This document shows positions 6,371-59,543 of a stretch of 64,000 nucleotides of DNA, piece by piece. Origin of the DNA: Macrostomum lignano (Eukaryota); the NCBI GenBank assembly GCA_002269645.1, contig NIVC01003379.1, forward strand, positions 1 to 64,000. The letters are read 5' to 3'. The first letter of the stretch is position 1. Each line of letters opens with the position of its first letter. The notes beneath the pieces are model-generated. The model was not told where the DNA came from. It searched no databases and was given only the letters and a program-made list of their open reading frames with translations. The translations under genes and the position numbers were made by a program.

Positions 6371-6958
6371 GTTTGGTGTCGATATAAGTGTCGAGTTTGG
6401 AATAAAACAATCTATAAAACAGCAGCATTATTCAGTAAAACAAATAGGAGCAATTAAAAAAGTTAAACTAAATAAAACAAATTAAAACAAATCACTTAAC
6501 CCCTGCCAGCCCCGGGGAGGTTTAGATAAGCCTATTGGTTTTGGGGTAGGCGTACGCTCTGAGGGTCGGGGGTAGGGCCCGCTCTCGGCCTGACTGGCGC
6601 TGCTTGCCCGGCTCGATGTACAGTCCTCTTAGTCCCAATTAGGATGACTGTGGAGGATGAAGGATTACTTAAATCCAATTAGGATTTAAGTGTACATTAG
6701 TACACTCCCAACCTGGAAACCTTATTTCACTAGTGACGTAAAAGCCTAATTCATTGGCTGAGGCGCCGGAAGCATCATTGTCATTGTCAATGTCAGATAA
6801 AATAAAAATGTTATATGATGTTAGTAAAATAATTTAGCTCCTAGTAATAATTAAATGAGCAGTCTGGACAGATTTTATCAGGTCGTGCCCGCGACTGAGG
6901 AGCCTCTCCGGCGCCGTCTCGAGGTGAGTTAGTTTTTAGTTTATATGGCTTTTATTGC

Positions 6959-9699: not shown

Positions 9700-9793
9700 T
9701 GCAGTTAAGGTGCCCTATGTTTAGGGTAGAATTTAGAGAATTATTTTTATTATTAACAGCCATAGTTCAATTCAAAATTTTTATGATTATTGC

Positions 9794-11920: not shown

Positions 11921-13897
11921 TCTATACCTATAAAATGAAAACTCTGTGTGTCTGTGTACAATTTTGTTCGCTATGGACTCCCAAACCGCTCAACCAAATT
12001 ACACCAAACTTTACATCCACCCATAACTTACTACGGAGAATGCCTTAGGCTATCTTTAAATTTCCTAGACTCAAGTCTTCCTACCTAAAAGTACAAAAAC
12101 TGCTCAAAATGCGCAATTTTTTCACTAAATCCTCCATAGCGCCGCTCCACTTCTACCGATTCTCTTCAAATTTGACACAGACAATCTTCAACTATTTTGG
12201 CACAATCGTGTAAAATTTCGAGTCTCAAAGTTAATCCTGAACGGCGCTGTGCACTTTAAAAGTTAGGCTGTTTTTTAGCTTAGCAACCACCCCAACCTCC
12301 GCCCGCCTGCCTCTCTTTCCTGATCCCGATCTGGGCCCAGATGTGTAAGGGTTTCAAAATTGACTAACTTTCAGCTGCCATAAGTTTGCTCCACATAAAG
12401 CGATTGACATCAAACTTGGCACAGATCTTCATTGACTCATTCTCTGTCTAAATTTAAAGTTACAACTCAGTAACTCATTCAGAACAGAAACTGTAAGCAT
12501 GTGAAGTTTGTCTGCTTTTTCTGTTGTTTGTGCCACTCACTCACGCATTCCCCCAGAGTCAGAACAAGGGTCAGGCGATAGGGCTGAATGTACATAGCAA
12601 ATACACAGTGTTTTTGGAATAGCTTTGTTTATAGCCTTCTCTGCACCCCGTGGAGAGGCTACGTTTAGCCATCCAAAACAGTTTAGTGAGAAATTCTAAC
12701 CACTGCCCTCTGTATTGTCAAACTCTGCAGCAGTTTAACAGTGGATGGCAAATCGAGGGAATCCAGCATGGTTTGTAATAGCGAAAGATCTATGAAAAGG
12801 CGATGCGATGCAATGCAATACAAGTTATACAACCCTACTAAATAAGGCACACCATGGAAATTGTAGGTTTCTTTTAAAGGTAGTGTGTACATTTTAAATG
12901 GCCTCCTAAGAAATGCGTATTTCATTGGTTGTTAGACTGATGCAGACTGCAGTGGAGCTGAAGATACACAAATTCCTTTCAGGGCTGCAAATTGGCAAGA
13001 AAGATGACGTGATCAAAGCATGAGAACAACGATGAGAGTAGTACGTCCCACAAACTGGCTTTCGAAGCAGGGATCGACAGACTTTTACTTCAAAGCCAGA
13101 TAAAGAATCCAGCTTATGTGCGGGCCAGATGAGAGTGGAAAGGAGAAGGAATAGACTATTAGAAGAGAGGAGAGGCGAGAGGGGGATAAGAGAAAACATG
13201 GAAGATAAGAGGAGAGACAAGTGGGGAGGAGAGAGCAGAAAAGAAAGGAGGAAGAAGCGAGAGGAGGGGAGAAGGGAGGGAGAGGAAAGAGTCAAGGTGA
13301 GAAGAGGGGAGAGATGAGACAGAGGATCGATGAGAGGAGAGTAAAGAAGAGTGAGAAGAGAGTAGAGATGAGAGAGCAGAAAGAAGATGACAGAGTCAAG
13401 AGGAGAGGAGAGATTAGAAAGGAGAGAGTAGAAAGGATAGAGAAGAGAGGAGATAGGAGGGGGAGAGAGGAGTGAGAGGAAAAGAGAAAGAGATAAGAGA
13501 GAGGTGTAAGAAGAGGGGAGAAAGAAGAGATCAGATTGTAGAGAAGAGACAGATGAAAGGAGAGATGAGAGAGTAAAGATGAGAGATAAAAAAGGTGAAA
13601 AAAGAGTGCAGAGAGACGAGAGAAGATAATAGAGGAGAGAGAGTATAGAAGAGGGAAGAGAAAAGAAGAGAGGAGTCAGAAAAGGTGAAAGAGAAGAGTA
13701 CAGAGGAGATAAGTGAGAGAACGTATAAGAGAGTAAAGATGACAGATGAGAGAGCAGAGATGAGGGTGAACAGACGAGAGATGGGAGAGTAGAGAGAAGA
13801 GATTATAGAAACCAGAGGAGAGACAGGGAGAGAGAAGAGAAAATAGGAGAATGAAGAGGGGAGAGAGTAGAGAGGAGAAGAGAGATGGGAGAGGAGA

Positions 13898-13957
<60 letters not shown>

Positions 13958-15177
13958 GAGCAGAGAGAAGCGAGAAGGCGAGAAGAGATAAGAGAAAAAA
14001 GATAAAAGAAGAGAAAGGAGAGATATAAGAGCAGACGAGAGAGAAGAGAGGTGACGGAAGAGCCGAGCGACGAGGAGACAGAGAGGAGATAAAACAAGAA
14101 AAGAGATGAGAGGAAAGAGGTGAGGGAAGAGACGAGAGAAGAGGGGAGAGAGAAGAGATAAAACAAGAAAAGAGATGAGAGGAAAGAGAGAGACGAAAGA
14201 GGTGAGGGAAGAGACGAGAGAAGAGAGAAGAGAGGAGAGAGAGAGGAAAGAGTAGAGAGGAGAGATGATAGAGTAGAGGAGAGAGTTAAGAGAAGAGAGA
14301 AAAGAATAGAGAGGACAAGGAAGAGACGAGAGAAGAGGGGGAGAGAGGAGAGAGGAGAGGAGAGAGAAAAGAAGAGGGAAGAAATGAGATAAGAGATATG
14401 AAAGAGAAAAAAGATGAGGTAATATACGAAAGAAGATGGGAGAGAGGAGAGAGGAGAGGAGAGAGAAAACGAAAGAGGAGAGAGGAGAGCAGAGAGAAAA
14501 CGAAAAGTAGAAAGGAGAGAGGAGAGGAGAGAGAAAAGAATAGGGAAGAGATGAGATAAGAGATATGAAAGAGAAGAGAGATGAGGGAAGATACGAAAGA
14601 AGATAGGAGAGGAGAGGAGAGAGAAAACGAAAGAGTAGAGAGGAGAGAGGAGAGGAGAGAGAAAACGAAAAGTAGAGATGAGAGAGAAGAGAAGAAAGAA
14701 AACGAAAAGTAGAGAGGAGAGAGAGAGAAAAGAGTAGAAGAGAAGAGACAAGAGATAAGATAAGAGAGATGAAAGAGGAGAGAGATGAGGGAAGATACGA
14801 GAGAAGAGAGGAGAGAAGAGAGAGGAGAGACGAGGGACGAGAGAGAAGAAAGGAAACAGAAGAGACGATAGAAATATAGAAATAGAAAGGATCCAAGAGA
14901 CGTAGGGAGAGTCAGGGGGAGGCCAGAGTTTGCCAACACATGTTTTAGAGTCAGACAGACATTGCCTGACATTCTTCGGAGTACCCCAGCCAACAATATC
15001 AATGTTTGCCTCAAACCCTAATTTTACACGAGTGTGCTCCATTTTATGTCTACCCCTATCCTACGAACTATTAACAAGTTTTTGTTTGTGTATGGCCTTA
15101 GATTTCAGAATACATGCAAAAGTGGTTCCCAGGATTGGAATTCCCCGGGTTCAAAATCCGCGGGTTTCAACAGCTTG
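11921..15177 (+). mobile_element. Non-autonomous Helitron
   Basis: 5' end A|TCTATACCTATAAAATGAAAACTCTGTGTGTCTGTGT is typical of non-autonomous Helitron heads. Degenerate 3' end: GC hairpin (CCCGGG..CCGCGGG) followed by CAACAGCTTG|T, with CTTG in place of CTAG. Confidence 0.6.
13125..14900 (+). repeat. 1.8-kb polypurine (GA-rich) low-complexity tract including a pure (GA)n run
   Basis: Almost exclusively G/A on the + strand; it generates the spurious S/L/F-rich minus ORFs. Confidence 0.95.
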
Positions 15178-18100
15178 TAGACTTATAGCTCGTACGTATA
15201 AGTTTATAGAAAAAATAACAAAACTAATGACCCAAAAATAGGAACAAGAATCATTTTGACCTTTCTTACTTTATTTAGAATGACTATTGCGTCCATTGGA
15301 GACTGCAAAGCGTTGGGTCCAACTGTAGGCGAAATGTATAAACAAAGAGTGCAATAAGTCCCATGGACTATACTGTTAAACATTCGAATTACAATTATCT
15401 AACTCGAAAAAGACTTACAGTACTTCAGGTGGTCTAACTTTTAATGCAGTAAGGCTGACATATTAACTACTTGCATAAGAGCGATGAAAGAACTTCTTTC
15501 TTTCTTTCTAAAAGTATACACTTAAATGACACATTTTACATACACTTCATCCATTTGAATCAGGAGACCGGAATTCATTCTAACTAGATGGTGATAACAA
15601 TTGTTAGTCCAAGTGAATAAGAAAATCTAAAAGAAAAGATTTCCATTTAGAAAATGCCAGAAACCGTTACATGGAACGACAGCTGCTGACTGAGAACAAA
15701 TTTAATTGCACGGATGAGCATCAAAGTTGGGTTTAAAATTTCTATCTTGAAGTGACGAATAGACGGAATCCGTTTCCACTTCACTGGTCCTTTGAATCCT
15801 GCTGCATCTACAACAATGAATGGTGAAAAATGACGAAATCCACTGACCGCTCAGGAGCAAAAGCTAAGACATTTAGCAAAGCACTATCATAAACTGTAAG
15901 CCAGTAAATGTCTCGAAAGCAATGTAAACTTACGATATGCTTCTCTAGCCTTTTCCCGGAGGTGCTTACGCAAGCCATTAGGAGCGATTAAGCAAATTAG
16001 AAAAATATAATTTAAGTCGCGCATATGACACAGACCTCGCAGAGTTGCCCAGAGTGGACAATTTGTAGACAAAAAATTATACAAGGCGTCTTTATTCGCC
16101 GAACAAGAATCGTGCTGCTGCCTTGGCCGGCGGGATCCATAGGTGAGTTAAAGGCGGGTGGCACATGGGCAATGCAGCCTTTCACTCTATCAGTTTCCTT
16201 GAGCTCAATTCGGCCCGCCGTTCTAAATCGCTTAGGGCGCAGATGCAGTGGGGAGGCAACTCCTTTCAAATCGTCGGCTTTGGCAACTTGTATAGACAGG
16301 GCGACCGCCCACCGCACAGCCGATGCACTGCGTTGCACGAAAAATTTGCAAATTTGGCCGGCCTAGATGTTAAAGTTGCCGTCGAGAGAGGCTCCCTTGG
16401 AGTTTCAGCAGTCGTCGATGGCAATGACGTGCTCCTTGTCAGCAGCGCCATGGGCGAAGGCGGTGAAGCCGTGCTCGTTGTGAGCAGTGACGTCGGCAGA
16501 GGCGGCGAAGCCGCGGTCGGTTTCAGCAGCGACGTAGGCAAAGGCGAAGACGTTGTGATTGTCAGCAGTGAATTATGCGAATGCGGCGAAGACATGCTCG
16601 AAGACATGCTCGCTGATTGCGTTAACGTGCGCATTGAAGTTTGCGACTTGGACGAGTTACGTAGAATTTTTTCAAAATTTCACACGCTCTGTGCTGCTGC
16701 CCGTGCCATTTATTTCGAGTTTAAATTTCGAGTTTCTACCTAGGCGTCAACGCTATCAGCTGGCTACTATTAGTGGTTGCCATAGTGCGGGAGGTCGTTG
16801 CAGCTGCCGGTGTTTCTTCTGCGGACTCCTTCAGGTCGTAGTCGAAGCTTAAAACGGACGCCATGATTTTTTCGGCTTTGCACACGGTGGACTCGTAGAG
16901 CGGTTTGTACATGGACTTCTAGACTAGCAGGACGTAAAACTCAAAGATCGTGTAAATTTTTAGGACGACGATTTCCTAGAAAAAAATACACTGTGGAGAC
17001 GGAGATAAAAGAAAATCTTTTTTTCATCACAAAATCAATGATTGCATTTGATCTATGGCAGCTAAGATAACCATTATTTTCATTTAGCTCGCACAACATG
17101 TTACTCTATTATATTTTAATATAGTTGTGTATTGACAGTTTCATCTTCATATTATTTTCTTTTTATTTCATAAGCCCCAAGTTACAAAATGCTCACAAGT
17201 GGCATTAGCCGAACTTTTTGTTTTTTACCCTCTTGAATCAAGTATATTTGTAATAAAAATGCTGCATTCAGGTACTATTAAGCCATTATTGTAGGTATAA
17301 TTCCATTTCAATAGTAAGTACAATAATTACTAGGCCCCTTTCTAGGACTAGGCCAATGCCTATGTAATTAAATAAAGAGCTTGTTCACGAATGCCATTTT
17401 CATTTTCTTGTTTTACCTAGGAATAGTTTTAATTTAGAAAGCTATCAGTTTTTAAGCCAGACTTTAAGTTTAAGGCAGACAAAATGGTTAAACTTAAAGC
17501 CAAGTCACAACCAGGCTTGCACTAACCATTTTTCTAGGTTTCTACACTAAGACTTTTTTAATTTGGATTTTCAACATTTTTTTATAGTACATTACGAGTA
17601 TATTGCAAATTTGAATAGGCTAGCTAGCTGGTTTACCTTCCTTGAATTAGATATTTTGTTATATGATACCTTTGAAAATTATGATTTTAATATGTAATAG
17701 GACATTTCATATTTAAATTATAGTAATTATGAAAACATATTTGAAGATGATAGGTCTTTTCATTTTTAAAAACTAAAATGGCTAAGACTACATATCTATA
17801 TTTATCTTAACTTTAGTCTTTCCCTAGACACTCGAAATTGTGGGAAATTGTCCAAAATTGCAATCTGATTGTAAGGATTGGGCAATTATTGCAAATTGAT
17901 TACAAGTCACTTGCAGGTTTTGACAAGCTGATTGCCAATTTAATTGCAATTGATGTAACCGCCCTTGTCGCCGGTCCGCTCCTATTGAGAGACGAACGCT
18001 TGGCTAGAGGGGCAATGACCGTAGGCTGCGTATGACCGGGCAATGACCTGACGGTCCTCCAGCACCAGACTGTCCCGCCCACATGATTAGTAGCTTTGGT

Positions 18101-19721
18101 AGCGCTTCGTGCCCAGAGGGCCAAGGACCCACATGGACCCCACCTGTAGCCAAGGTGCAATAGTTGGTCACTCGGTCATGGTATGACCGAGTGGCTGCCA
18201 CCACTCTATGTGACCTGGCGCACCTGGATCTTTCTACCAGACCTCTCGAGGCTAGAGCCCCGCCTGGGATGGTTACCAGGAGATTTAGGCTAACAGGGGA
18301 GACACACGCAGCCGAGTACAGGGACTCTGCTTGGGGCATGATCGGAAACTCTGGGCTCAATCTGGAGGATTTCTCAGCAGGGGATCCTTTGTGGCTGTGA
18401 GCGAGGCTGACTTGCGACTTTGATTACTAAGAGTAGTATGAGGCGAACATGTACTGTCTATAGTTTAGATTGCTTAGGGCGAAGGGACGCGTTAGCATGG
18501 GGTTTCAACCTTCCTACTGCCATTCTGTGCCAAGACTCGCTAATACCCTCTACTGCACGCACTCACGGACCCGCGGCACGCACTCGCACAGGCGGGCTTT
18601 GCACGGAGAGAGGCCATTAGCTTACCCAAACTTCCCTATGCTTTGCCACCCCGGAAGAAAGGCTTAACAAGCCATGAGTGAAATGATGGTGAAAGAGTGA
18701 ATAATGATGAGGTTAGTTAATAGTTAATAATTCGGCCCTTAGGCAAATAATCAGGCAATTAGGCGGCTTCACTATTGAGTAAAAATACAGCAAAAGGTAC
18801 GGTATCACAACTGGCTCAGCTCTCTAATCAGACAATGGACAAATAAGCAAATGCAATTAGAGCACAAATCAGTAACAGGAACTTACCGGCAGCTGCACAG
18901 AGAGAGAGAGAGAGAGAGAGAGGCGGAGTGACCGAGGGCGGCTGTAGGCTGCAGTCAGGCGGACAGTGAAGCGGCGATGCGCTGAAGCGACGAGGCGCTG
19001 GTGTAGATCAGGCGAAGCTGATGATGCTGGGTGGTGTCAGACCGCTGGCCGATAGGCGAGCTCACTTGGGGAGCTGAAGATAACTTGGCGGTAACAGACC
19101 GCGGACCGGCAGGGATTCGTCTTATAGACGAATGGGTCAGAACTCAGTCTGACGGCAAGTCTAAAGAAAGACTAGGAGCCCGAAGGTGGGCCAAAGTTGA
19201 GTATTCTCACTAGCAATCTACGCCCCCCGTTGGGGAGCCAAAGAAATGCAATACAAGTTTTTTAATAAGCTAAATGTATCCTTGAAATCTTAAAAAATCT
19301 CCTGTCAAACCTTGTAAGCCTTGACATGTCAGTAATTCCCCCCACAAGCTTTAACATATCAACTTCCCCCCCCCCTGACATATCAGCAATGCCCCCAATA
19401 AGCCTTTAAAATCTAAAAATATCTGTCAACCTTCTAACCCTAATCCTAACCTAACCCTAACCCTAACTCGGACACTGGGAGACTGATACTGTATTTCGGG
19501 AGACTAATACACTTCTGGGAACCCGATACAGTTTGGTGCATCATACTCCCAGGTTAGGGTTTGAAGTGTATGTATCACCCTCAAGGTGTATTAGTCTCCC
19601 TCTTTGCTTTTTCACCTTAGGGTTATCTATGGAGTACACAGAACATGTAACTACACAACACTATGGAGTGCTAGTGCTACTGTTACTATTAGGTTTACAT
19701 AGCGTCACATAAGGTGACATT

Positions 19722-20143
19722 GGGTTAAATGGGGTTAGGGTTAAATATGGTTAGGGTTAAATAGGGTTAGGGTTAAATGGGGTTAGGGTTAAATGGGGTT
19801 AGGGTTAAATAGGGTTAGGGTTAAATAGGGTTAGGGTTAAATAGGGTTAGGGTTAAAAAGGGTGAGGGTTTAAAAGGGTTAGGGTTAAAAAGGGTGAGGG
19901 TTTAAAAGGGTTAGGGTTAAAAAGGGTGAGGGTTTAAAAGGGTTAGGGTTAAATGGGGTTAGGGTTTAAAAGGGTTAGGGTTAAATGGGGTTAGGGTTAA
20001 ATAGGGTTAGGGTTAAATAGGGTTAGGGTTAAATAGGGTTAGGGTTAAATAGGGTTAGGGTTAAATAGGGTTAGGGTTAAAAAGGGTGAGGGTTAAATAG
20101 AGTTAGAGTTAAATAGGGTTAGGGTTAAATAGGGTTAGGGTTA
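19722..20143 (+). repeat. Telomere-derived minisatellite, ~16-bp unit TTAGGGTTAAATAGGG
   Basis: About 25 tandem units with variants (TTAAATGGGG, TTAAAAAGGGTGAGGG). Confidence 0.9.
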
Positions 20144-22423: not shown

Positions 22424-22964
22424 CTAAAGCATCCGATCTTGTTACTATGTTACTTGTTACATGTTACTGGATTCGATAAACATGTTCCTGGATTCCATAA
22501 AAATGTTACTGGATTTTTGGAAAATGCCCTTTTAGAACAGACTGATTTTGGCATATCTTTGAAATGTGTCACTTATAAAATTAAAAAGCAAATTTAAAGC
22601 AATCATGTATAATAAAAATATTTAAATCTTTCCTGGCTACTCTGGTTTCCTGGTATTTTGTCTCTTCTAGACCTGAGCAGATCAAAGCACCTTCTAAAGT
22701 AAATTTTAAAAATAAAGTGGATGTTAAAAGTAGCTTCTTAACTAGCAATCTACGCCCCCCGTTGGGGAGCCAAAGAAATGCAATACACGTTTTTTTAATA
22801 AGCTACAGGTATCCTTGAAATCTTAAAAAATCTCCTGTCAAAACTTGTCAGCCTTGAAATGTCAGTAATTCCCCCCCCACAAGCTTTAACATATCAACTT
22901 CCCCCCTTGACATCTCAGCAATGCCCCCAATAAGCCTTGGAAATCTAAAAATATCTGTCAACCT

Positions 22965-23090
22965 TCTAACCCTAACTCTAGCCTAACCCTAACCCTAACC
23001 CTAACCCTAACCCTAGCCTAACCCTAACCCTAACCCTAACCCTAGCCCTAACCCTAACCTAACCCTAACCCTAACCTAAACCTAACCCTA
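22965..23090 (-). repeat. Interstitial telomeric-type tract (CCCTAA)n with variant units
   Basis: About 20 units including CCCTAG, CCTAA and CCTAAA variants. Confidence 0.95.
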
Positions 23091-23639
23091 ATCTGCATCC
23101 GAGGGGCTCCTGGCGGACTAACCCCCTCACGAGGGGGTTCTCGCGGCGAGGGGCTCTTCGCCCCTTACCTTGCGAAACGCCCCTCCAGGGGGCGCGAGAA
23201 GCCCCTCGCCATGTGCGAGAAGCCCCTCACCATAAGAATACATGTATTTTTTTCTTTTTTTTTCCGCAATACAATCTATAAATCCTTTCGTTTCTCTATC
23301 AACCTAAGCCACTATTTGAGGTCCCTTGACCTCCGTAGGCGGTCAGGGGGGAATTAACCCAAAAAAGCTTAATAGAGTGACATTTACTTTCGACGCTTTT
23401 CCAAGGTATGAGATAGAGGTCACCTTGTCATTAGGATTTTCTATACCATCCTAATCCGAGATCTCAGGGTGAGACTTTTCCGATTAGGTGAGATTTACCT
23501 TTAGATACGTTTTTCGGGTATGAGATAGGGGTCACATCTAACATATATTATACGGACTATCTAATCTTACAATCCTACAGTGAGATCTCAGGGTGCCTCT
23601 TTTCCAATAGGGTGAGATTCAGATTTAGATCTGAATTAT

Positions 23640-25395
23640 CCGCTTATCACTCTACTGAGCGACGATATTTAGTAGTCAAGATGGGCTTAAAATTATGAGG
23701 GGCGAAATGCCCCTCTTGAGGGGCAAATAGCCCCTCCTATCTCTACTAAAACACTTTTATAAGTTCCTTTCCTATATTCTCTGAGTAACAATTGACTTTG
23801 AACACATTTACATAACTGAAAGTCCGACTACCAAAACCTAGGATGGCCAGAAGCTAAAGTGAAGTAACGTCATATCAGTATATCGACCTTCTAAGAAAGT
23901 GTACTGATTTTCTAGAGTAGATGTCTGGAGCATTATTCTCTCTTCAGATTTCAGAAATAATATAAAAAGACAGGGAAATTTATATCATATCTTTGCTTTA
24001 TCGCAAGAGTGCGCTCAGTCTTTTTATTACGCTTATCACTCTACTGAGCGACGATATTTAGTAGTCAAGATGGGCTTATAATTATGAGGGGCGAAATGCC
24101 CCTCGTAAGGGGCGAATAGCCCCTCATATTTCTACTAAAATACTTTTATAAGTTCCTTGATATATTCTCAGAGTAACAATTGACTTTAAACATTCTTATA
24201 AGAGGCAATAAAGACAGTATAGTCATGACATGCCAGATATTGCATGTCCCCTGAAAAACTTACTACTCTGACATAGGCATACGTCGGTTCTCCTGACGAG
24301 GGTGAGAGTTACCTTCAGGACTCTCAAACGTTCATTGCGCTACTCATAATAAAGTGTATAACATGGACTTGTATGGTTAAGAACAAGAGCATGCAGTTGA
24401 ATGCCCCAATAGTACCTAACCTCTGAGTTGAAAATCTTACTCCTCACTATATTGGCAAACATCAAAGAGCAAATAAAAGCCAAGTCGAGATTCACTTGGC
24501 CGCATAGAAAAATGTTTGACAACTACTTAGGATATTTTTTCGCTTTAGGAGGTCTATACACGATTTCAGAATTTTTACACAACTGAAAGTCCGACTACCA
24601 AAACCTAGGATGGCCAGAAGCTAAAGTGAAGTAACGTCATATCAGTATGACCGAGTCCGCTCAGTCATTTTGATACGCTTATCACTCTACTGAGCGACGA
24701 TATTTAGTAGTCAAGATGGGCTTATAATTATGAGGGGCGAAATGCCCCTCGTAAGGGGCGAATAGCCCCTCATATTTCTACTAAAATACCTTTATAAGTT
24801 CCTTGATATATTCTCAGAGTAACAATTGACTTTAAACATTCTTATACGAGGCATTAAAGACAGTATGGTCAAGACACGGCAGATATTGCATGTCCCCTGA
24901 AAAACTTACTACTCTGACATAGGCATACGTCGGTTCTCCTGACGAGGGTGAGAGTTACCTTCAGGACTCTCAAACGTTCATTGCGCTACTCATAATAAAT
25001 TGTATAACATGGACTTGTATGGTTAAGAACAAGAGCATGCAGTTGAATGCCCCAATAGTACCTAACCTTTGAGCTGAAAAACTTACTACTTAACTGTATG
25101 GGCAAGCATAATAGAGCGCACAACAGCCAAGTCGAGATTCACTTGGCCGCATAGAAAAATGTTTGACAACTACTTAAGATATTTTTCGCTTTAGGAGGTC
25201 TATACACGATTTCAGAATGTTTACACAACTGAAAGTCCGACTACCAAAACCTAGGATGGCCAGAAGCTAAAGTGAAGAAACTTCATATCAGTATACCGAC
25301 CTTCTAAGAAAGTGTACTGATTTTCTGGAGTATATGTCTGGAGCATTATTCTCCCTTCAGGTTCTAGAAATAATATAAAAAGACCGGGAACTTTA
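23640..25395 (+). repeat. Three imperfect direct repeats of a ~650-720 bp unit with twin GAGGGGC/GCCCCTC hairpins
   Basis: CGCTTATCACTCTACTGAGCGACG starts at ~23641, ~24030 and ~24677. Copy 1 is internally deleted and copy 2 lacks the tail shared by copies 1 and 3. Confidence 0.9.
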
Positions 25396-25842
25396 CATTA
25401 ATTAGTTTCAAATTAAGTAATCGAATTTATTTCTTGGAAATGCTGCGACATTCTTATCTCATTATCGACCATGTTATTTTTTTCGAAGCATGGCACACTA
25501 GGGAAAGAAAATCTTCAATTATCAAACCAAAAAGCAAAATAATAAGCAAAATAATGCGGAAAGCAAGCCAATAAGCAAAATGATAAGCAAAGCAACACAA
25601 AATTGTAAGCAAAGTAAAATACGAAGTACTAAGCAAACCAAAAATTAAAAAAGAAAATATAAGGAGGTCAATGAAAAAAATTATGAGCAATAAATCAGCC
25701 ATGAAGTAATTAAGTATTAAGCAACTAAGCAATTAAGCTATTAAGTAAAGAATTGTAAGTGATCTAAATCGATTTTTTAAGTATGTTTAAGCTTTATCTT
25801 GTATTGATTTCTGACGGGAATATTTTTAGAACGAGTTTTATT

Positions 25843-27533
25843 TTAATCGTTCAGCCATTACAACTCTCCAGAGTTTCCGCGTCCCTAGGGCCGTAGTCGA
25901 ATAAAAGTTCACGTCCCTTCGGAACATATTTTGTAGTCTGGAAATATAGGGCCGGTCGAATCACGCCTCCCGGACATTGACACCGGTGGTGACTACTCGG
26001 CAGTTTTTTTTTGTCCGAGAATGATTTAAGAACCTTCCGACGCGATCGGTGTCCGTGGCGTCGATAGCATATTCCCGGCCATTGAAATCAAAGTTAAATA
26101 AAAAAAACGTGTCTTTGTCGGCCTCGGCGAGCTCGACGTAGCGAGTGTCGGATTCCGTCTTGCTAAGAAGCTTACCTGCATACTCGCATACGTATGCTCC
26201 TCTGGCGAGGGCACACGCAGCAAAAGCTCCGCGGCCTTTGCTCCGGGTAGCACTAACAGTTACTGCTGAGTCATCGTTGTTAAGGAGCCGCCGGAGGACT
26301 TCTGCTTGTCCTGCTGCCTTTCGGGCACCCTTTAAGCTAGCTCCCCGCGTAGGGCCGCGGATAGTGACGTCGGCAGGGCCTTCGTCGTTGCCACTGCCAC
26401 TGCCGACGTCGCCACTGCCGAATGAGGCATCGAGGTCTACCTATATTTTTTCAATTAAAGTATGTATGAGGCTTGTATGAGCATGTAGAGACTTAAAGTA
26501 TAACCTCAACTACGAGGTTAAGAGCTTATGGACTTACGATTTAGGACTCAAAATACAAAAGGTATAAAAGAAAATAATACGGGTATAAGTAAAAGTACTT
26601 TAAAAGTAGTAGATAAAAGACGAAAAATAACAATTAAACCAGACAATAAATATTTATTACATACATCGAATAATGGCCCTCCAGGCAAGGATCCATTAAT
26701 AACGGACCGACGCGCGTCCGGTGTCTATATTGAGTAGTATTTAGATCGAATGAACATTAATGTACATCTTGCTAATTTACATCTATACGATATCGTAGGC
26801 CTGTGTAGAATCTGGGGCAAGGTATCATGCTATGCCATGCTATACTATACTACGAGCTCGTAAAATTTGCGCCAGGGTTTCTATGCTATCTTTCTGCATA
26901 GCGTGCTGAATACCGCTTATATAGATCTGCTACAAGTAAGTAAACGTGAATACTAGCAGATACAAAATACTTACAGCGGCAGCAGCGGAGCTGGTGGTGG
27001 TGGAGGTAGCAGCGGAGGTGGCGGTGGTGGAAGTAGCAGCGGAGGTGGCGGTAGCAGCGGATGTGGCAGTGTAGGCGGCCGTCATAGTGGCACCGGCAGC
27101 ACCGGCACCGGCACCTTCAGCTGGCTGGACAGGTTATATTTGAGGTTATATAAATATATTTAGCTAAAGTTATCATGTAATTTTGATTCATTTGCCCTTA
27201 AAAGCATGGAAAACTTACTTGGAAAAAGCGTGTTGGATAATAAAAAGATTATTGACACTGAACACTAAACGACTTGATTGTGCTTATAAACTTTTTTATA
27301 AGTTTGTAAATTGACTACTTTTTTTATTTAAAGCTTTCGCAGAAAGACTATGAATGCTTAGTTAAAATATGGAATTAAGAATTGGTATCTAAAATTTTAC
27401 GGCTTACACTAGGCATTTTTGGGTTTGGAGAACCTTGAACCGATTCTAGGGTCCTGCGTTGGCTTATAATGAGGACGTGCTGAATTCGCAGCATTTCTTT
27501 TAGCCAGGCGTTTTCTGATTCCAAAGCTCGCAT
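25843..27533 (-). CDS. Spliced SET8/PR-Set7 (KMT5A)-like lysine methyltransferase gene (~291 aa) with two 1-nt frameshifts at short homopolymers
   Basis: Exons 27533-27408 (MRALESENAWLKEML...), 27124-26975 (Ala/Thr-rich) and 26440-25843, all phase 0 with GTAAG donors. The last exon reads SKGRGAFAACALARGAYVCEYAGKLL...YAIDATDTDRVGRFLNHSRTKKNCRVV...[fs ~25972]PGGVIRPALYFQTTKYVPKGRELLFDYGPRD...ESC[fs ~25858]KWLND*. Motifs KGRG, EYxG, DAT, RxxNHS, ELxxDYG and the terminal WL match SET8. It is missing from the ORF track because the exon has no start codon. Confidence 0.85.
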
Positions 27534-27808: not shown

Positions 27809-29510
27809 TCATCGACGCTTCCGCCTGGCTGCTCGCTTCTTGGCGGCGTACATATTCTTAAATTTAGGCTCATACTTTGAGCTATAATAAAATGCCACAC
27901 ATTGTGCAATAGTCTTGCTATTGATGGCGGCGGCGATCTTCGAAAACTCTTTGCCGAATTTTTTAAACGCCCGTAAAAACTGGCCCTTCTCGTCTTCTGT
28001 CCAATTTGCGAATTCGCTTGAAGCGTACTGAATCCTGCGCGCCAGATCACTTTGCGCAGAATTCAGTAAATTAAAGTGCGTTCTACACGCAAGCGTCTTC
28101 AAATCCTAAATGAAACAAAATTGAACATTAAATGCACGAACCAATACGGAAAAGAAACCAATATAAGAAACCAATTTTAAGATCAAGATCAAGTTACAAG
28201 TTCTTGCCCTTGAAAATCTTAATGATCGCGTTCTGAATACTTTCAAACTTCCGGTTACAAGTATTGATCAGAACGTGATTACTAAAAGAATTGTGCCCTT
28301 CCTGAAAAACTTACTACGCGAAATAATGTTTGACTTTCTGACACAAAAATACATTGAATTTACTGTCTGCTAAATTCTTTAGGAATGACGTGAATATTGT
28401 GACACACTCACCGCTTCATGTGAATGTCCACGGCCGGTTGGACAATTCCTTGGCACCGTTGTGGCACTGGCCGAGGCGGAATGTGATGGCAGCTGAGGTG
28501 AGGCCGAGTCACCGGAGACCTGAGGCACCAGAGGCACCACAGGCTCGCAGGGCACATCATCATTGGTTTGCCACTGGGAAAGCATTTCAGCAAGATTGAG
28601 GAAAAATTTAGATTTTGGATGACACTTTTATAGTCTAGAAAACCCTAACCACTTTTATAGTCTAGAAAAAGTTACCTAATGCTTACAGAAAACCAATTAC
28701 AATATTCATTTATTTTGATTCTAAAAAGTGTGACTACAGGCTTTCAGAAAATTATATAAAGTATAAATAGAAATCAAGTTCTTGCCCTTGAAAATCTTAA
28801 TGATCGCGTTCTGAATACTTTTTATTAAAAACTTCCGGTTACAAGTATTGATCTGAACGTGATTACTAAAAGAATTGTGCCCTTCCTGAAAAACTTACTA
28901 CGCGAAATAATGTTTGACTTTCTGACACAAAAATACATTGAATTTACTGTCTGCTAAATTCTTTAGGAATGACGTGAATATTGTGACACACTCACCGCTT
29001 CATGAGAATTTCCGGTCGGTTGGACCGTTGAAGAACGGCCGGTTGGACCGCTGTGGCACTTCGGCACCGTTGTGGCACTGCTGGCACTGGCCGAGGCCGA
29101 ATGCGGTGGCCGCTGAGGTGAGGCCGAGCCACGCTGAGGCACCAGAGGCACCAGAGGCTCGCAAGGTGAGGCCGAAAGGTGAGGCTCGCAAGGCACATCA
29201 TCATCATCAGTCGTTTGCCACTGGGAAAGCAATTCAACCAGATTGAGGAAAAAATTAGATTTTGGATGACACTTTTATAGTCTAGAAAACCCTAACCACT
29301 TTTATAGTCTAGAAAAAGTTACTTAATGCTTACAGAAAACCAATTACAATATTCATTTATTTTGATTCTAAAAAGTGTTACTACAGGCTTTCAGAAAATT
29401 ATATAAAGTATAAAAATCATTAGAAAAGTGGTTTGCAGAACCGAAATACTTACCTTTGTCCGTTTGCTGGGTTGGTCACTTGACGAGTTGACGAGTGGAC
29501 GTTTCGCAGC
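27809..29510 (-). CDS. Spliced gene for an NCoR/SMRT-type SANT-domain protein (~246 aa, no in-frame ATG found)
   Basis: Exons 29510-29454 (57 nt), 29220-28996 (225), 28573-28412 (162) and 28105-27809, all phase 0. The SANT reads WTEDEKGQFLRAFKKFGKEFSKIAAAINSKTIAQCVAFYYSSKY and is followed by a basic tail KKRAARRKRR*. Confidence 0.75.
28190..29410. repeat. Tandem duplication (~585/640 bp) of one exon plus flanking intron
   Basis: CAAGTTCTTGCCCTTGAAAATC...TATAAAGTATAAA occurs at ~28197-28765 and ~28775-29413. Confidence 0.92.
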
Positions 29511-29648: not shown

Positions 29649-29777
29649 AACCCTAGCCCTAACCCTAACCTAACCCTAACCCTAACCTAAACCTAACCCT
29701 AGCCCTAACCCTAACCTAACCCTAACCCTAGCCTAACCCTAACCCTAACCCTAACCCTAACCCTAACCTAACCCTAA
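29649..29777 (-). repeat. Interstitial telomeric-type tract (CCCTAA)n with variant units
   Basis: About 21 units. The first 53 nt are identical to 23038-23090. Confidence 0.95.
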
Positions 29778-30609
29778 AGCATTGAAATTTCAGTAATTCT
29801 CTCTAAGAGTCATTATAGCACTACTACAGCATTATAGCGATTCCCTGCAAGCCTCGACATCGTAGGAATTCCCAAATCAATCTCTTAACTTCGACATGAA
29901 GCTTCTTTTATTTTTTACATTACGGTTTTTTTATCAGCGATCCCTCCCCTGAGGAGGCATCAAATAATGTAACAAAAAGTTTTTAATAAACTACATGTAG
30001 CTTCTGGCTTTAGCCTTGAAATCTCATTTATACCCCAGTGAGCCTTGACATCTCAGCTATTCCCCCCGTAAGCCTTGACATGTCAGCGATGGCCCCCATA
30101 AACCTTGAAATCTAAAAAATCCCCTGTTACTTTAACCCAACCTAAAGCCTTGAAATCTCAGCAATTCTTCTCCCCTAAGCCTTGACATTTTAGTGATTCC
30201 TTTTTTAAGAATCACAGCACTATAACGATTTCCACCAAGCTTTGACATCGTAGCAATTCCCAAATTAATCTTTTAACTTCGACATGACTTTTCTTTTATG
30301 TATACATAGTGCTACTTTTATTTTTTACATGACTCTTCTTCTATCAGCGCCCCCCCCCGTGGCGAGCCAACAAAGAATGTAATAAAAAATTGAGTAAAGT
30401 ACATGAACTCTGAAGTAGCTTCTGACTTTTGCTTTAACATCTCAGAAACCCCCCCCCCGTAATCTTAGTTATTCTCTGAGAGCCTTGACGTCTCAGTTTT
30501 TCTCCCCAGCACAGCATTATAGCTGCATTTAATTTTTACATGACACCTTTCATGTCTGACATGACGCTTCTTTTATTCTACCATGATGCTTCTTAATTTT
30601 TTAAATGAC

Positions 30610-31030
30610 ACTTTCATTAGTCTTTAAATGAGGCTTCTATGATTTTTCATGACGCTTCTATGATTTTTACATGATGTTTCTATGATTTTTTATATGACGC
30701 TTCTATGATTGTTTATATGACGCTTCTATGCTTTTTACATGACGCTTCTATGATTTTTTTACATGACGCTTCCATGATTGTTTACATGACGCTTCTATGA
30801 TTTTTACATGACGCTTCTATGATTTTTTACATGACGCTTCTATGATCGTTTAGATGACGCTTCTATGATTTTTACATGACGCTTCTATGATTTTTTTACA
30901 TGACGCTTCCATGATTGTTTACATGACGCTTCTATAATTTTTACATGACGCTTCTAAGATTTTTTACATGACGCTTTTATTATTTTTTACATAACGCTTT
31001 TATGATTTTTTACATGACGCTTCCATGATT
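30610..31030 (+). repeat. Tandem repeat, ~22-24 bp unit ATGACGCTTCTATGATTTTTTAC
   Basis: About 18 directly visible units; no unique spacers. Confidence 0.92.
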
Positions 31031-31659
31031 TTTTAGTTTTCTTGGCGTTAAAAAACTTTAATTAAAAAAACTCTCTAAAAATTCGAACCATCGTCCCTGC
31101 ATTTAGCAGTCAGTCTGTTTACCTCTAGGCTAGCTCTCATCGTTTTGATAACATGAATTTTAGCACTTCTATTTGGAGTTTCAAAACTCCAAGCATAGAG
31201 TAAATCACACGAGGCAGTTATGACATAAACAATTTCTCAGTCAGTCAGTATCAGTTAACAATATGGTTACGCAATCTAAATCAAGTCTGTGCTACGCTTC
31301 CACACAGCATTTTCAATACTGTGACGCAATTCAAGTCGGAGTTACAATTCAGTTATGATGCAATCTATTTCAGAATCATAATTCAACCAGTCAGTTTTTT
31401 CTCTAGCATTCTTACAATGCATTTCAAGTCGAAAAGTTTGCTTGAACTTTGCAAAAAAGCATGTTTTTCGAATATTTTATGCCTTTAGCATCGAGAATTT
31501 CTTAGCCACGATGCATGTACCGTCACGGGAAAATTTCTGATCGAACAGTGCAAGTCTCATGAAAATCGGTCCAGCCATTTTTTCTCTAATCGATTGCGTA
31601 CAAACAAACAAACAAGCAAGATTTTCATTTTTAGTATATTGGATGGACTAGCCAATCCC

Positions 31660-33700
31660 AACCCCCGTTGGGGCTTTCCGTCCAAACTCCAACCACAGTT
31701 TTCCCCATCCACAAAATCCCCGATGCAAAGAATCTCACATGCAAAGAATCCCCCATCCAAAGAACCCCTATCGATAGAATCACGATCCGAATAATTCCCC
31801 ATTCAATGAATCCCCTACTCAAGAAATTCCCGATCTACAGAAGCCCCCTATCTAACGAATCCCCATCCAAAGAATCCCTCATCCACAGAATCCCCATCCA
31901 AAGAATCCCTCATCCACAGAATCCAAATATAAAGAATCCTCCATCCATCCCTATCCAAAGAATTTCCTCATTCATTCCTATCCAAAGAATTTCCTCATTC
32001 ATTCCTACCTAAAGAATCCCCCATCCATCCATATCCAAAGAATCCCCCCAATGAATCACATCACATCATAATTCACATCATAATCCCCATCTAAATAAAC
32101 CATAGATCTCCCATCTAAATAATCCATAGATCTCCCATCTAAATAATCCGCCATCAAAGAAATAACTGGCCAAAGAATTCCCTCATCTAAAGAACCCCGT
32201 CCGAATAATCCCCATCCAACGAATCCAAAGAATCTCCCATCCAAATAATCCCCCTATTAATAGAATTCTTGGCCAAAGAATCCCCTCATCTAAAGAACCC
32301 CCGTCCAAATAACCCCCATCTAACGAATCCTTCATTTAAAGAATCAACTATTCGAAAAACCCTCCATCGAAACAATGCCCCATCAAAGGAATTCCCTAAT
32401 GAATCATCTATCCAAAGATATCCATCCATTAGAAGCATCCCTCATCCAAAGAATCATCAATCCATAGAATTCCCCCCAAAACTTAACATCTCAGCAATTC
32501 CCCCGAGCCTCGACACCTCATAAAATTCCCCCAAGCCTTGACATCTTACCAATTTCTTCCCGTCCAAAGCCTTGACATCTTACCAATTTCTCCCCGTCCA
32601 ACGCCTTGACATCTTACCAATTTCTCCCCGTCCAACGCCTTGACATCTTACCAATTTTTCCCCGTCCAACGCCTTGACATCTTACCAATTTATCCCCGTC
32701 CAAAGCCTTGACATCTCAGCAGTTCCCCGTTAAGCCTTGAAATCTCAGCAATTCTCCTCCACAAGTCTTGCATCTCAGCAAGTCCCTCTTAAGCCTTGCA
32801 ATCCCCCAAAGTCCCTCTTAAGCCTTCACATCTCATTAATTCCAATAGGTAAGATTTTATACATGTACCTGGTATTTCAATAATTCCCCCTATAAATCTT
32901 GACATCTTAGAATTCTCTTCCGAGCAAGCATCCCCTGATAGAAAGTACCCCCACCAAGATTAGTGAAACAATTTCCTCAGCTATCCAATTCCAACCCCCG
33001 TTGGGGCTATTCGTCCAAACTCAAACCACAGTTTTTCCACGCAATAAAATTTCACCCAACTGAATCTCAAATTTAAAGAATCCCCCATCCAAAGAATCCA
33101 CCACCCATAGAATCCACGATACAAAGAATCTCACATGCAGAGAATCCCCATCCAAAGAAACCCCCATCGATAGAATCCCCGATCCGAAGAATCCCCATCC
33201 GTCCCTATCCAAAGAATCCCCCCATCCATCCCAATCTAAAGAATCCCCCATCCATCCCTATCCAAAGAATCCCCCCATCCACAGAATCCCGATCAAAATA
33301 ATGCAAATATTCTCTCATCCAAATAAACCTCCATCAAAAGAATCATTGAATCTGAAGAATCTGAATCTGAGTCCCCTCATCTAAAGAACCCCGTCCAAAT
33401 AATCCAAAGAATCATACTCCAAATAAACTCCATCTAAAGAATCAAAGAGTCTCCCGTCTAAATAATCCCCCATCAATAAAATCCTAGGCCAAAAATCCTT
33501 CATCTAAAGAATCCCCCATTCAAAGAACCCTCCATCGAAAGAATCCCCCATCGATGGAATTTCCCAATGAATCACCTATCTAAAGATATCCATTAGAAGC
33601 AGCCCTCATGGAAGGAATCCCCAATCCACAGAATTCCCCCCCCCAAGACTTGACATCTCAACAATTCCCCCCAAGCCTTGATACCTCAGTTCATTCTCTC
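31660..33700 (+). repeat. Helitron-internal satellite blocks (AAGAATCCCCATCC; GCCTTGACATCTCAGCAATTCCCC; 34-bp tandem at ~32530-32720)
   Basis: Two related blocks (31660-32980, 32982-33700), each starting with the CCCCCGTTGGGG hairpin. Confidence 0.8.
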
Positions 33701-33744
33701 TTCAGCTTTGATATTTCAGCTTTGAAATGCCGAAAACCGCCTCC

Positions 33745-33841
33745 TTTTATAGCCTTCCCAGCCGCCGCTCCAAGGTCGTTTCCATGACTCCGGCCCTCTC
33801 TCTCTGATTGGCTGCCGGTCGAATGACGTCAGAATGAGTCA
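33745..33841 (-). promoter_or_regulatory. Pol II promoter-like cluster in the LTR-like element (TATAAAA, CCAAT, CRE, AP-1)
   Basis: Minus-strand TATAAAA at 33745-33751 and CCAAT at 33807-33811; TGACGTCA at 33824-33831; TGAGTCA at 33835-33841, again at 34247-34253 and 34258-34264. Confidence 0.5.
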
Positions 33842-35272
33842 TGATGAGAAACATGAGACCGGCATAGCAACATGAGAAAAAGGGAAATTGCGCAATCCGG
33901 AGGTGGGGTGGGGGGATAATTGGCGCAGCGGGTGGTCGCGAAAGTGGTGCGCAAGCAAACATTGAGAACAATGGGGCCGGGGTCGAGAACAAAGGGAATT
34001 GGAAATCGGGGATAATTGGGGAGAATCGAGAACAATAGAAAAACAAACATTGGAGAAAAGGTGATAATTAGGTGCGAAAACGAGAAAAAAAGAAAGAGAA
34101 AATCGGAGAAAATGTGATAATTTGTGGGGGTAAGGAGAACAAAAGAATCAAAAACGAGAACAATAGACGCGGAGGTGGGGTGGGTGTCGCATGAAATTTG
34201 GGGAGGAGAACAATAGCATGAGAAAAGGTTGCGCAAGAGAGGGGGATGAGTCATCGATGAGTCATCGAGGGGAAGAAGGGGTCACAGGACTTGTGTCACC
34301 GTTTGGGAGTTTGGGAAGGGATGGAAGGTCGGTGAGCACACAAAATACTGTAAGTAGACGCAGAGAAAGAGGGGGCAGCGCAGGAAAATAGTGCAGAGAG
34401 ACACAAAAAGAGGGGGGATAGGGAAAGTACAAGAAGAATAGGGTGGAGCACAGGGGAGACAAGGTAGATGGGGAAGGTACAGAGAGGGATCGGGAGCTCC
34501 GGAAAGGCAGGTGTGGCGGCAGGGGAGACGGAACCAAGGCAGCAGGGGGGTGCAGCAGAGCGGGAGTCTCCAGGCCTGGTCGGAGACCTGGCCGAGTCTC
34601 GACAGCTCTGTGCAGGGGGGTACACGGGATAGGAGGCACTTTCGAAAAAGTTCCCATGCCCTATCCCGCGACCAGAGCGTGGTTACATCACAATCTTGGC
34701 AATCCGTCTTAAGCAGATTTCAATTGTAACAATTGGACGTAAGTGAATTGCAATTTTATAAATTTTGATTGCGATCGGATTACAATTGGCATAATTGAGG
34801 TATCACATTGCTACTAATAGTAAGATGCATGATTTAATTAAGGAATAAAATTGTGTCATTTGTAATATTTGTGCTCATTTTTATTCCATTACATCTACCA
34901 ATAAATGAATGATGACACTTTCAAGAAGTACTCATGCACACAAGTATTGAAGTCTTTTTATACAAGCTGCATAGCAAGAAGCGAATCCACAGCTGATAGA
35001 TTCATTTCAATTTAAATATATTTGAATCACACAATTGCGCATTAAAAACATAAATGCGTAGGTATGTAGGCATGCGTAGATAACGACTGACAACTGGCAA
35101 TTATTAGTGTTACCAGTCACTACACGAGTAAGAAGTTTTCGAAGTGTACTAAGCACAAGAAGTAGAGTTATTAATTCTATATTTTCAGTCAATTAGATAG
35201 ATATCAAGTAAAAAGTAGAATAAAATATAGTATCTCATAATTGCATGAGTCATAACATTATTATGCCTATGG

Positions 35273-59396: not shown

Positions 59397-59543
59397 TCTT
59401 TTTACTTGGGATTGGAATGATTATCGAAATCAGAGAAATCTTCAAGTATTTCAAGTATATTTCAGGAATTATATTTCAAATGAATTAATAATATATCTTG
59501 AAAAACATTTACCTAGTTAAGCTTGTAATCCTAGCTGTTCCAG

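What the first reader, a model, noticed from the sequence alone, without database searches (positions are those of the whole stretch)
25843..27533. Hidden SET8/PR-Set7-like methyltransferase with a natural Tyr-to-Phe switch
Seen: the SET exon is absent from the ORF track. It keeps KGRG, EYxG, DAT, RFLNHS and DYG, but reads ELL-F-DYG where SET8 has ELL-Y-DYG. Known: this position (Y334 in human SET8) is the Phe/Tyr switch, and Y334F lets SET8 go beyond monomethylation. Inference: the mobile copy could deposit H4K20me2/3 or act on another substrate. Its N-terminus (short coiled coil plus Ala/Thr linker) is unlike host SET8. Both frameshifts are single-base shortfalls in short runs (CC for CCC, AA for AAA), typical of long-read consensus error, so the gene may be intact.
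Basis: partly seen in the sequence, partly recalled or inferred. Interest (0 to 1): 0.85.

Follow-up and report, generated by a model that had tools for sequence, protein, structure and literature searches.

The report
Broken SET8-like methyltransferase gene in flatworm
A single, frame-broken copy of a divergent SET8-type histone methyltransferase gene sits in a repeat-rich stretch of the flatworm Macrostomum lignano genome; its 'Phe instead of Tyr' active-site residue is real but common among such genes, and nothing shows that this copy is mobile or working.

Summary
On the minus strand at 25843-26440 there is a SET domain (Pfam SET, E=2.5e-9) whose closest solved relative is human KMT5A/SET8. 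Its Phe sits exactly at the SET8 Tyr334 column, the same column as in the engineered Y334F crystal structures.

- **Organism.** The window is Macrostomum lignano genome.
- **State of the gene.** The SET reading is spread over three frames (two frameshifts). It has no start codon of its own and lacks the C2H2 zinc-finger exon found in its intact relatives.
- **The Phe.** It is not special. 36 of 147 SET8-like domains among the nearest relatives carry it, including the closest one (45% identical).
- **Mobility.** Nothing marks this copy as mobile. No terminal repeats bracket it, no transposon protein domain lies within 6 kb, and the window has no second copy.
- **Assembly error.** This is disfavoured. 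A 6.8-kb stretch shared with another assembly shows no single-base indels, and the exon's two long homopolymers are read in frame.

Best reading: a recently disabled, partial paralogue of a lineage-specific SET8-like family. The me2/me3 product specificity is an inference only. Interest is low to moderate.

The parts
25843..26440 (-). SET8/KMT5A-like SET-domain exon, broken: two frameshifts, no other internal stops, no in-frame start codon. It carries the N-flank helix region, KGRG, EYAG, DAT, RFLNHS and ELLFDYG (Phe at the SET8 Tyr334 column), and a C-terminal W-L motif just before a stop.
   Evidence: reading; Pfam SET 37.9 bits; best PDB relative KMT5A, E~2e-11; P0002, 45-63% identity, two frames; switch column; 24 of 29 conserved family residues kept; GC 0.54 against 0.28-0.35 in the flanks.
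26975..27124 (-). It is low-complexity sequence made of a 27-nt tandem repeat. CAG acceptor, GTAAGT donor, phase 0.
   Evidence: 27-nt repeat, 2.7 copies; species splice motifs; GC 0.69. No homology to any relative. Unverified.
27408..27533 (-).
   Evidence: no Pfam family; GC 0.46. No homology to any relative. Unverified.
27812..28105 (-). Neighbouring stop-free segment encoding a CoREST/RCOR-type Myb/SANT domain. It ends in a stop and has no ATG of its own. Not shown to belong to the SET gene.
   Evidence: Myb_DNA-binding E=2e-10, DUF7952; best PDB matches RCOR3/RCOR1 SANT1, E~2e-10.
23638..25398 (.). Tandem ~646-bp units downstream of the SET exon (repeat flank).
28197..29414 (.). Tandem ~580-650-bp units upstream of the SANT exon (repeat flank, unrelated to the downstream units).
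22966..23091 (+). Interstitial telomere-type (CCCTAA)n array on one side of the SET/SANT island.
29649..29777 (+). Interstitial telomere-type (CCCTAA)n array on the other side, in the same orientation.

Best explanation
This is a lone, partial and recently disabled paralogue of a lineage-specific SET8-like lysine methyltransferase family in Macrostomum lignano. It lies in a satellite- and transposon-rich region. Shown: intact relatives (P0002; M. lignano BOX15_Mlig022522g3) combine N-terminal C2H2 zinc fingers with a SET8-type catalytic domain. The window keeps only the catalytic exon, in three frames (two frameshifts) and without its own start codon. Inferred: when it was intact, the product would have bound S-adenosyl-methionine through the KGRG and NHS motifs and methylated a lysine in a SET8-type channel. 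The Phe at the Tyr334 column would widen that channel, so that di- or perhaps trimethylation was possible, as in the engineered Y334F enzyme. The Phe is a trait of the subfamily rather than a novelty of this copy. The copy as assembled most likely makes no functional enzyme.
For: SET domain with KMT5A as the closest solved relative. The closest protein, P0002, is 45% identical over 111 residues and 63% over 32 residues, both ungapped, in two different frames. The confident model of P0002's SET region matches human SET8 first: the top 23 PDB hits are SET8, with TM up to 0.87 and rmsd 1.6 A. The Phe is at the switch column, and it is common in the family: Y 101, F 36, other 10. The organism is M. 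lignano, since a transposon ORF in the window is ~100% identical to BOX15_Mlig016445g1. The species has an annotated ZnF+SET paralogue. No zinc-finger exon exists in the window, and the SET frame has no start codon. The breaks look real: 0 single-base indels in 6.8 kb compared with another assembly, and the long homopolymers inside the exon are read in frame. The disablement looks recent: 24 of 29 strongly conserved residues are kept, against a family mean of 25.9. The genome is a neopolyploid with extensive duplicated sequence (PMC5730564; PMC10733133, listed), so decaying duplicates are expected.
Against: No read-level or transcript evidence was available, so the two frameshifts could not be checked directly. 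Other alleles or homeologous copies could be intact. The catalytic residues are almost fully preserved, which an intact gene would also show. Splice-compatible upstream exons exist, and the species' spliced leader ends in ATG, so the lack of a start codon is not decisive. Copy number in the whole genome could not be measured with these tools.
Confidence: 0.6

Rival explanations
1. The gene is intact and the two frameshifts are consensus errors of a long-read assembly. It is then an unannotated, functional Phe-type SET8-like methyltransferase. It would be expressed either from the reader's three-exon model or by trans-splicing, which supplies an ATG.
For: The conserved residues are nearly all present. 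There are no gaps relative to P0002 within the aligned pieces. GC content is exon-like and AT-rich intron-like spacers have GT-AG ends in phase. Donor motifs match the species consensus. The SL ends in ATG. The published assembly is PacBio-based.
Against: There are no single-base indels in 6.8 kb of sequence shared at 99.8% with GCA_002269645.1. Under a uniform error rate, two errors in about 600 nt would then be unlikely. The published assembly was polished with Illumina and RNA-seq reads. The 8-T and 9-A runs inside the exon, where such errors concentrate, are in frame, and the breaks are not in long runs. No protein like it is present among 15 billion predicted proteins. The acceptor in front of the SET exon is TAG, which matches neither the CAG nor the YTNCAG motif of the species.
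Confidence: 0.17
2. The SET gene is cargo of a mobile element. It could be a large DNA transposon of the KDZ/Zisupton or related kind that carries a chromatin-modifying passenger, and this copy is a decayed insertion.
For: In M. lignano the annotated ZnF-SET paralogue lies 2 kb downstream of a KDZ-transposase gene on the same strand. One Phe-type SET8-like representative is fused to a Ulp1 peptidase domain; that this domain often travels with DNA transposons is my own knowledge. SET8-like domains occur in multi-copy arrays in a fish and a sea cucumber protein model. SET genes carried by transposons are known in oomycetes (PMC12730594). The window is very rich in transposons.
Against: No terminal inverted or direct repeats bracket the gene. 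No transposase, RT, integrase or helicase domain lies within 20-33 kb on either strand. The window shares no KDZ-like coding sequence or DNA with the paralogous locus. The window has one copy. The paralogous locus also shows no bracketing repeats, and that paralogue is single-copy among annotated proteins. None of the longer representatives is fused to a transposase, RT or integrase.
Confidence: 0.13
3. The SANT exon and the SET exon belong to one transcription unit, either a chimeric SANT-SET chromatin protein or two cistrons of an operon resolved by trans-splicing.
For: They lie on the same strand about 1.4 kb apart, and both are chromatin-type domains. 15% of M. lignano genes are in operons (PMC8629364).
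Against: The SANT reading ends in a stop and is followed by a 22% GC spacer. No relative combines SANT with SET8-like domains. The candidate acceptors do not match the trans-splice motif. Neither exon has an evident start.
Confidence: 0.05

Closest known systems
Human KMT5A / SET8 / PR-Set7 (H4K20 monomethyltransferase; PDB 1ZKK, 5TEG and others)
   Same: It is the best solved relative by sequence (E~2e-11, next family 1e-6). The intact closest relative has the same fold. The KGRG, EY.G, DAT, NHS and DYG motifs are shared, as are the homologous N-flank helix region and the C-terminal W-L ending.
   Different: Identity to canonical SET8-type domains is only ~37%. Phe replaces Tyr334. No canonical N-terminal region was found, and the arginine anchor is not clearly aligned. 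The reading frame is broken twice, and it is not the orthologue.
Engineered SET8 Y334F (PDB 3F9W, 3F9X, 3F9Y)
   Same: It has the same residue at the same alignment column. 3F9X holds a dimethyl-lysine in the channel (PMC3529403), and the entry titles refer to multiple methylation.
   Different: That is a point mutant of the human enzyme with measured activity. Here the Phe is natural, sits in a protein only ~37% identical, and no activity is known.
C2H2 zinc-finger + SET8-like proteins: P0002 (Logan SRR19430222, organism unknown), M. lignano BOX15_Mlig022522g3 (P0059), P0012, P0104
   Same: P0002 is the nearest relative on both SET pieces and has the identical ELLFDYG. P0059 shows that the architecture exists in the same species.
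   Different: The window lacks the zinc-finger exon. P0059 has Tyr at the switch and is only 38% identical. Those proteins are intact.
Transposon-borne SET genes (HarbingerS and MuDR families of Phytophthora; SETMAR as a SET-transposase fusion)
   Same: They are precedents for a SET methyltransferase travelling with, or fused to, a DNA transposon (PMC12730594; SETMAR chain 3bo5 among the weaker PDB hits).
   Different: No transposase or element ends are associated with this SET gene. Those SET domains are not of the SET8 type, as far as the cited text says.

Membership tests
SET-domain lysine methyltransferases (Pfam PF00856) | Profile match above the curated threshold | tested here: met
   37.9 bits against a cut-off of 22.4, E=2.5e-9, on the longest in-frame piece. 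The next piece matches profile positions 84-105.
SET-domain lysine methyltransferases (Pfam PF00856) | Cofactor and catalytic motifs (GxG, EYxG Tyr, NHS, DYG Tyr) | tested here: met
   KGRG, EYAG, RFLNHS and FDYG are read directly. 24 of 29 strongly conserved family columns are kept.
SET-domain lysine methyltransferases (Pfam PF00856) | A continuous reading frame able to give a whole domain | tested here: not met
   Two frameshifts, with the reading spread over three frames. There is no in-frame start codon in the exon.
KMT5A / SET8 subfamily | Closest to KMT5A rather than to other SET families | tested here: met
   By PDB phmmer, KMT5A chains score E~2e-11 and EHMT1, the next family, 1e-6. 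For the intact relative P0002, SET8 comes first by both sequence and fold.
KMT5A / SET8 subfamily | SET8-type fold with N-flank helix and C-flank ending | tested here: inconclusive
   Met for the closest intact relative (model pLDDT 90-98 in the SET region, TM 0.87 to 5teg/1zkk). It cannot be modelled for the window's own product without joining frames, which was not done.
KMT5A / SET8 subfamily | Tyr at the Phe/Tyr-switch column (Tyr334), the basis of monomethyl specificity | tested here: not met
   Phe is at that column. 24% of the nearest SET8-like domains share it.
KMT5A / SET8 subfamily | N-terminal arginine anchor (R188/R192) for nucleosome binding | tested here: inconclusive
   The family columns read RRSxR. 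P0002 keeps RR. The window has two Arg four residues apart just upstream, but HMMER leaves them unaligned (feature taken from PMC7893823).
KMT5A / SET8 subfamily | Orthology to the canonical single-copy SET8 | tested here: not met
   Identity to canonical-type domains is 0.37-0.38, close to the family median of 0.34. The nearest relative is the ZnF-SET protein P0002.
KMT5A / SET8 subfamily | H4K20 methylation activity and its product state | not testable with these tools
   No biochemical data are available. The product state is inferred by analogy only.
C2H2 zinc-finger + SET8-like proteins (P0002 / P0059 type) | N-terminal pair of C2H2 fingers encoded upstream of the SET exon | tested here: not met
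   tblastn of the three N-terminal regions gives nothing better than E~5, and no C2H2 pattern lies in a plausible position.
C2H2 zinc-finger + SET8-like proteins (P0002 / P0059 type) | SET domain closest to that group | tested here: met
   P0002 is the best single-domain hit (E=1.8e-21), with 0.47 and 0.59 identity on the two pieces.
Gene carried by a mobile element | Terminal inverted or direct repeats bracketing the gene | tested here: not met
   Only tandem satellites, telomere-type arrays and low-complexity pairs were found.
Gene carried by a mobile element | Transposase, RT, integrase or helicase gene in the same unit | tested here: not met
   All 95 stop-free segments of 45 aa or more in 20-33 kb, on both strands, were scanned. 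Only SET and Myb/SANT were found. There is no KDZ-like sequence.
Gene carried by a mobile element | Multiple dispersed copies with shared ends | not testable with these tools
   The window has one copy. No eukaryotic genome collection could be searched by DNA. No protein 50% or more identical exists in the 15-billion-protein collection.

The most novel reading that the evidence does not exclude
The window's gene is one member of an undescribed animal family of SET8-like methyltransferases with a natural Phe at the product-specificity switch. Members would often carry C2H2 fingers or a Ulp1 peptidase and would travel with DNA transposons (KDZ/Zisupton-like). They would write higher H4K20 methyl states, or methylate another substrate, at or near the element. 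That would make it a transposon-encoded chromatin writer in Metazoa.
Probability: 0.08. Interest if true: 0.65.

Novelty: new member of a known kind. Interest (0 to 1): 0.25.

Why it matters
As it stands, the finding adds an unannotated and probably dead SET8-like paralogue to a flatworm genome that is already known to be full of duplicates and repeats. That is useful for annotation but not surprising. Two by-products are of more general use. First, about a quarter of the SET8-like domains nearest to this one carry Phe at the Tyr334 column. The 'monomethylase' label of SET8-like genes therefore should not be transferred automatically to lineage-specific paralogues. Second, a zinc-finger + SET8-like architecture exists in M. 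lignano and elsewhere, once next to a KDZ transposase and once fused to a Ulp1 peptidase. If that link to transposons were confirmed by distribution data, it would be a new example of mobile elements carrying histone-modifying enzymes in animals.

Tried and rejected
- The word-indexed protein search with the longest SET piece found nothing. The exhaustive HMMER search was needed instead.
- The phage nucleotide collection gave no match.
- Pfam refuses translations that contain stops, so I scanned stop-free segments instead.
- Neither the window nor the paralogous locus L002 has repeats that bracket the gene.
- The window shares no DNA or KDZ-like coding sequence with L002.
- The first AlphaFold model, from three sequences, was unusable at pLDDT 35. 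The 80-sequence alignment worked.
- The run accession that holds P0002 (SRR19430222) is not mentioned in the paper library, so P0002's organism stays unknown. Its contig carries no M. lignano spliced leader that I could see.
- I suspected that the repeated non-SET module of the fish protein P0001 was recombinase-like. Pfam and PDB gave nothing, so I dropped the idea.
- The arginine-anchor test was inconclusive.
- Rfam and tRNA scans of the window were empty.
- I considered that spliced-leader trans-splicing could supply a start codon to the SET exon. The acceptor there does not fit the species motif, so this remains a weak possibility.

Full report
**What is there.** Reading the minus strand of 25.5-27.9 kb and translating it in three frames shows a SET-domain reading that ends at 25843 and begins at 26440, directly after a stop. 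Pfam SET (PF00856) scores 37.9 bits, against a cut-off of 22.4, on the longest in-frame piece. The following piece matches the last 22 positions of the same profile. The reading is absent from the mechanical ORF list because no start-initiated ORF of that length exists in that frame. It is distributed over three reading frames, which means two frameshifts. There are no other internal stops, and the exon has no in-frame start codon. I give no positions for the breaks.

**What kind of SET domain.** Among solved structures, human KMT5A/SET8 chains are the best match (E about 2e-11), and the next family, EHMT1, is five orders of magnitude weaker. A word-indexed search of 5.8 billion proteins found nothing. 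An exhaustive HMMER search of 1.84 billion representatives found 734 relatives. The best single-domain hit is P0002, 349 aa, from a Logan assembly of run SRR19430222, organism unknown. It aligns to the window in two ungapped segments, 45% identical over 111 residues and 63% over 32 residues, in two different frames. This confirms independently that the domain is broken relative to an intact homologue. P0002 has two C2H2-type fingers at its N-terminus and ends ...GEELLFDYG...FPWLTK. Its SET region was modelled with an 80-sequence alignment (pLDDT 90-98). The model matches human SET8 in the first 23 PDB hits (TM-score up to 0.87, rmsd 1.6 A), and MLL1 follows.

**The Phe.**
- P0002's GEELLFDYG aligns column for column with wild-type SET8 GEELLYDYG and with GEELLFDYG of chain 3f9w.
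- 3F9W/X/Y are SET8-Y334F, and 3F9X holds a dimethyl-lysine (PMC3529403; PDB titles).
- The window's GRELLFDYG aligns without gaps to P0002.
- It is not rare. In an alignment of the SET domains of the 150 nearest representatives, that column holds Tyr in 101 domains, Phe in 36 and another residue in 10. The Phe looks like a trait of divergent SET8-like paralogues rather than of this copy.
- That Phe permits di- or trimethylation here is an inference from the human mutant. Nothing tested here bears on activity or substrate.
- The nucleosome-binding arginine anchor of SET8 (PMC7893823) could not be aligned confidently in the window.

**Where it is.** A 699-codon transposase-like ORF elsewhere in the window is essentially identical to Macrostomum lignano BOX15_Mlig016445g1. 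The match to that record (GCA_002269645.1) is 99.8% but covers only a 6.8-kb element body with different flanks. The species is therefore M. lignano, and the window is another insertion, locus or assembly. The window is rich in transposons: LINE RT/endonuclease fragments, a Gypsy RNaseH-integrase, and DUF4218 and DUF4806 ORFs. Around the SET exon there are unrelated ~600-bp tandem units on both sides and same-orientation (CCCTAA)n arrays at 22966-23091 and 29649-29777. On the same strand, about 1.4 kb upstream, a stop-free segment encodes a CoREST-type SANT domain and ends in a stop.

**Is it mobile?**
- No inverted or long direct repeats bracket the gene at any scale in the window.
- I scanned all 95 stop-free segments of 45 aa or more on both strands of 20-33 kb, and only SET and Myb/SANT were recognised.
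- The window has one SET copy.
- At the family level there are leads. In M. lignano the annotated ZnF+SET paralogue P0059 (BOX15_Mlig022522g3, with Tyr at the switch) lies 2 kb downstream of a KDZ-transposase gene on the same strand. One Phe-type representative is fused to a Ulp1 peptidase. SET8-like domains occur five and eight times in single protein models of a seadragon and a sea cucumber. Transposon-borne SET genes are known in oomycetes (PMC12730594).
- The window shares no DNA or KDZ-like coding sequence with the P0059 locus. That locus has no bracketing repeats either. No representative is fused to a transposase, RT or integrase.
- 'The mobile copy' is therefore unsupported for this locus.

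**Broken for real, or an assembly artefact?**
- Across the 6.8 kb shared with GCA_002269645.1 there are 11 substitutions, one 3-nt gap and no single-base indel. An error rate high enough to place two frameshifts in about 600 nt would predict about twenty.
- The published assembly was Canu-assembled from PacBio reads and polished with Pilon using Illumina and RNA-seq reads (PMC5730564).
- Inside the SET exon, the two long homopolymers (8 T, 9 A) are read in frame with lengths that match the relatives, and the breaks are not in long runs.
- Against a long-dead pseudogene, 24 of the 29 most conserved family residues are kept (family mean 25.9, 10th percentile 21), and the aligned pieces have no gaps.
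- The simplest reading is recent disablement, which is expected in a neopolyploid genome with much duplicated sequence.
- I put about 0.6 on this reading and about 0.17 on an intact gene with assembly errors.

**Gene model.**
- The intact relatives put the zinc fingers in an upstream exon. P0059 has two exons, with the fingers in exon 1.
- The window has no zinc-finger exon.
One acceptor is CAG and the other is a non-consensus TAG. All junctions are phase 0.
- Composition is exon-like: GC 0.46 and 0.69, against 0.27-0.35 in the spacers.
- These exons have no homology to anything. The second is a 27-nt tandem repeat.
- The species' spliced leader ends in ATG, but the junction in front of the SET exon does not fit the trans-splice motif.
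- The N-terminus therefore remains hypothetical.

**Verdict.** Mobility is unsupported, intactness is disfavoured, and the novelty of the Phe is overstated. This is a new, probably dead, member of a known kind.

Noticed in passing
window 19434-19467, 22966-23091, 29649-29777; 19722-20143: There are three interstitial telomere-type (CCCTAA)n arrays in the same orientation, and a 26-copy array of a 16-nt unit (GGGTTAAATAGGGTTA) on the opposite strand sense. A ~225-bp unit followed by the array occurs twice, at 19209-19467 and 22741-22999 (92.7% identical). This suggests an element or satellite that ends in telomere-like repeats.
   Followed up: partly
window 56279-63073: This is a young-looking DNA-transposon-like element with an intact 699-codon DUF4218-type transposase-like ORF (59544-61643), a Ser/Ala-rich ORF and a DUF4806 ORF. 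It is 99.8% identical to a copy in GCA_002269645.1 (NIVC01000293.1). That copy carries an extra ~1.9 kb between the two matching blocks.
   Followed up: partly
window 27812-28105 (-): A CoREST/RCOR-type SANT1 domain is encoded in a stop-free segment that ends in a stop and has no ATG. It lies next to a tandem-repeat array. It may be the last exon of a gene whose other exons were not found, or a gene fragment.
   Followed up: partly
L002 5145-12004 (GCA_002269645.1 NIVC01000910.1): In M. lignano an 830-aa KDZ-family transposase gene lies 2 kb upstream, on the same strand, of the annotated C2H2 + SET8-like gene BOX15_Mlig022522g3. The pair sits between two satellite arrays. No bracketing terminal repeats were found.
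   Followed up: partly
proteins P0001 (Phyllopteryx taeniolatus XP_061624999.1) and P0003 (Holothuria leucospilota KAJ8048607.1): Two single protein models hold five and eight SET8-like domains. In the fish these alternate with a ~560-aa module that neither Pfam nor PDB recognises. Most of these domains have Phe or Cys at the switch column. They look like tandem or multi-copy units merged by gene prediction.
   Followed up: partly
protein P0090 (586 aa); P0286 (687 aa): Some SET8-like domains are fused to other enzymes: a Ulp1 (C48) peptidase in P0090 (Phe-type) and a UCH ubiquitin hydrolase in P0286. Their source organisms are unknown.
   Followed up: no
window 12000-16000 and 30000-34000: These stretches have very strong strand asymmetry (GC skew up to +0.39 and -0.44). 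They are made of purine-rich or pyrimidine-rich low-complexity repeats and give long spurious ORFs, for example the Ser/Leu-rich 503-codon ORF at 13531-15042.
   Followed up: no
window 5350-10815 (-); 49068-50809 (+); 48140-49045 (-): There are decayed transposon fragments here: LINE-type RT and endonuclease pieces, a Gypsy-type RNaseH plus integrase zinc-finger ORF, and a second DUF4218-type fragment.
   Followed up: no
L001 about 190-330: The contig that encodes P0002 has a stretch upstream of the gene that looks tRNA-derived (SINE-like) by eye. The P0002 gene itself is intronless and preceded by a CAG acceptor-like site. This was not tested.
   Followed up: no
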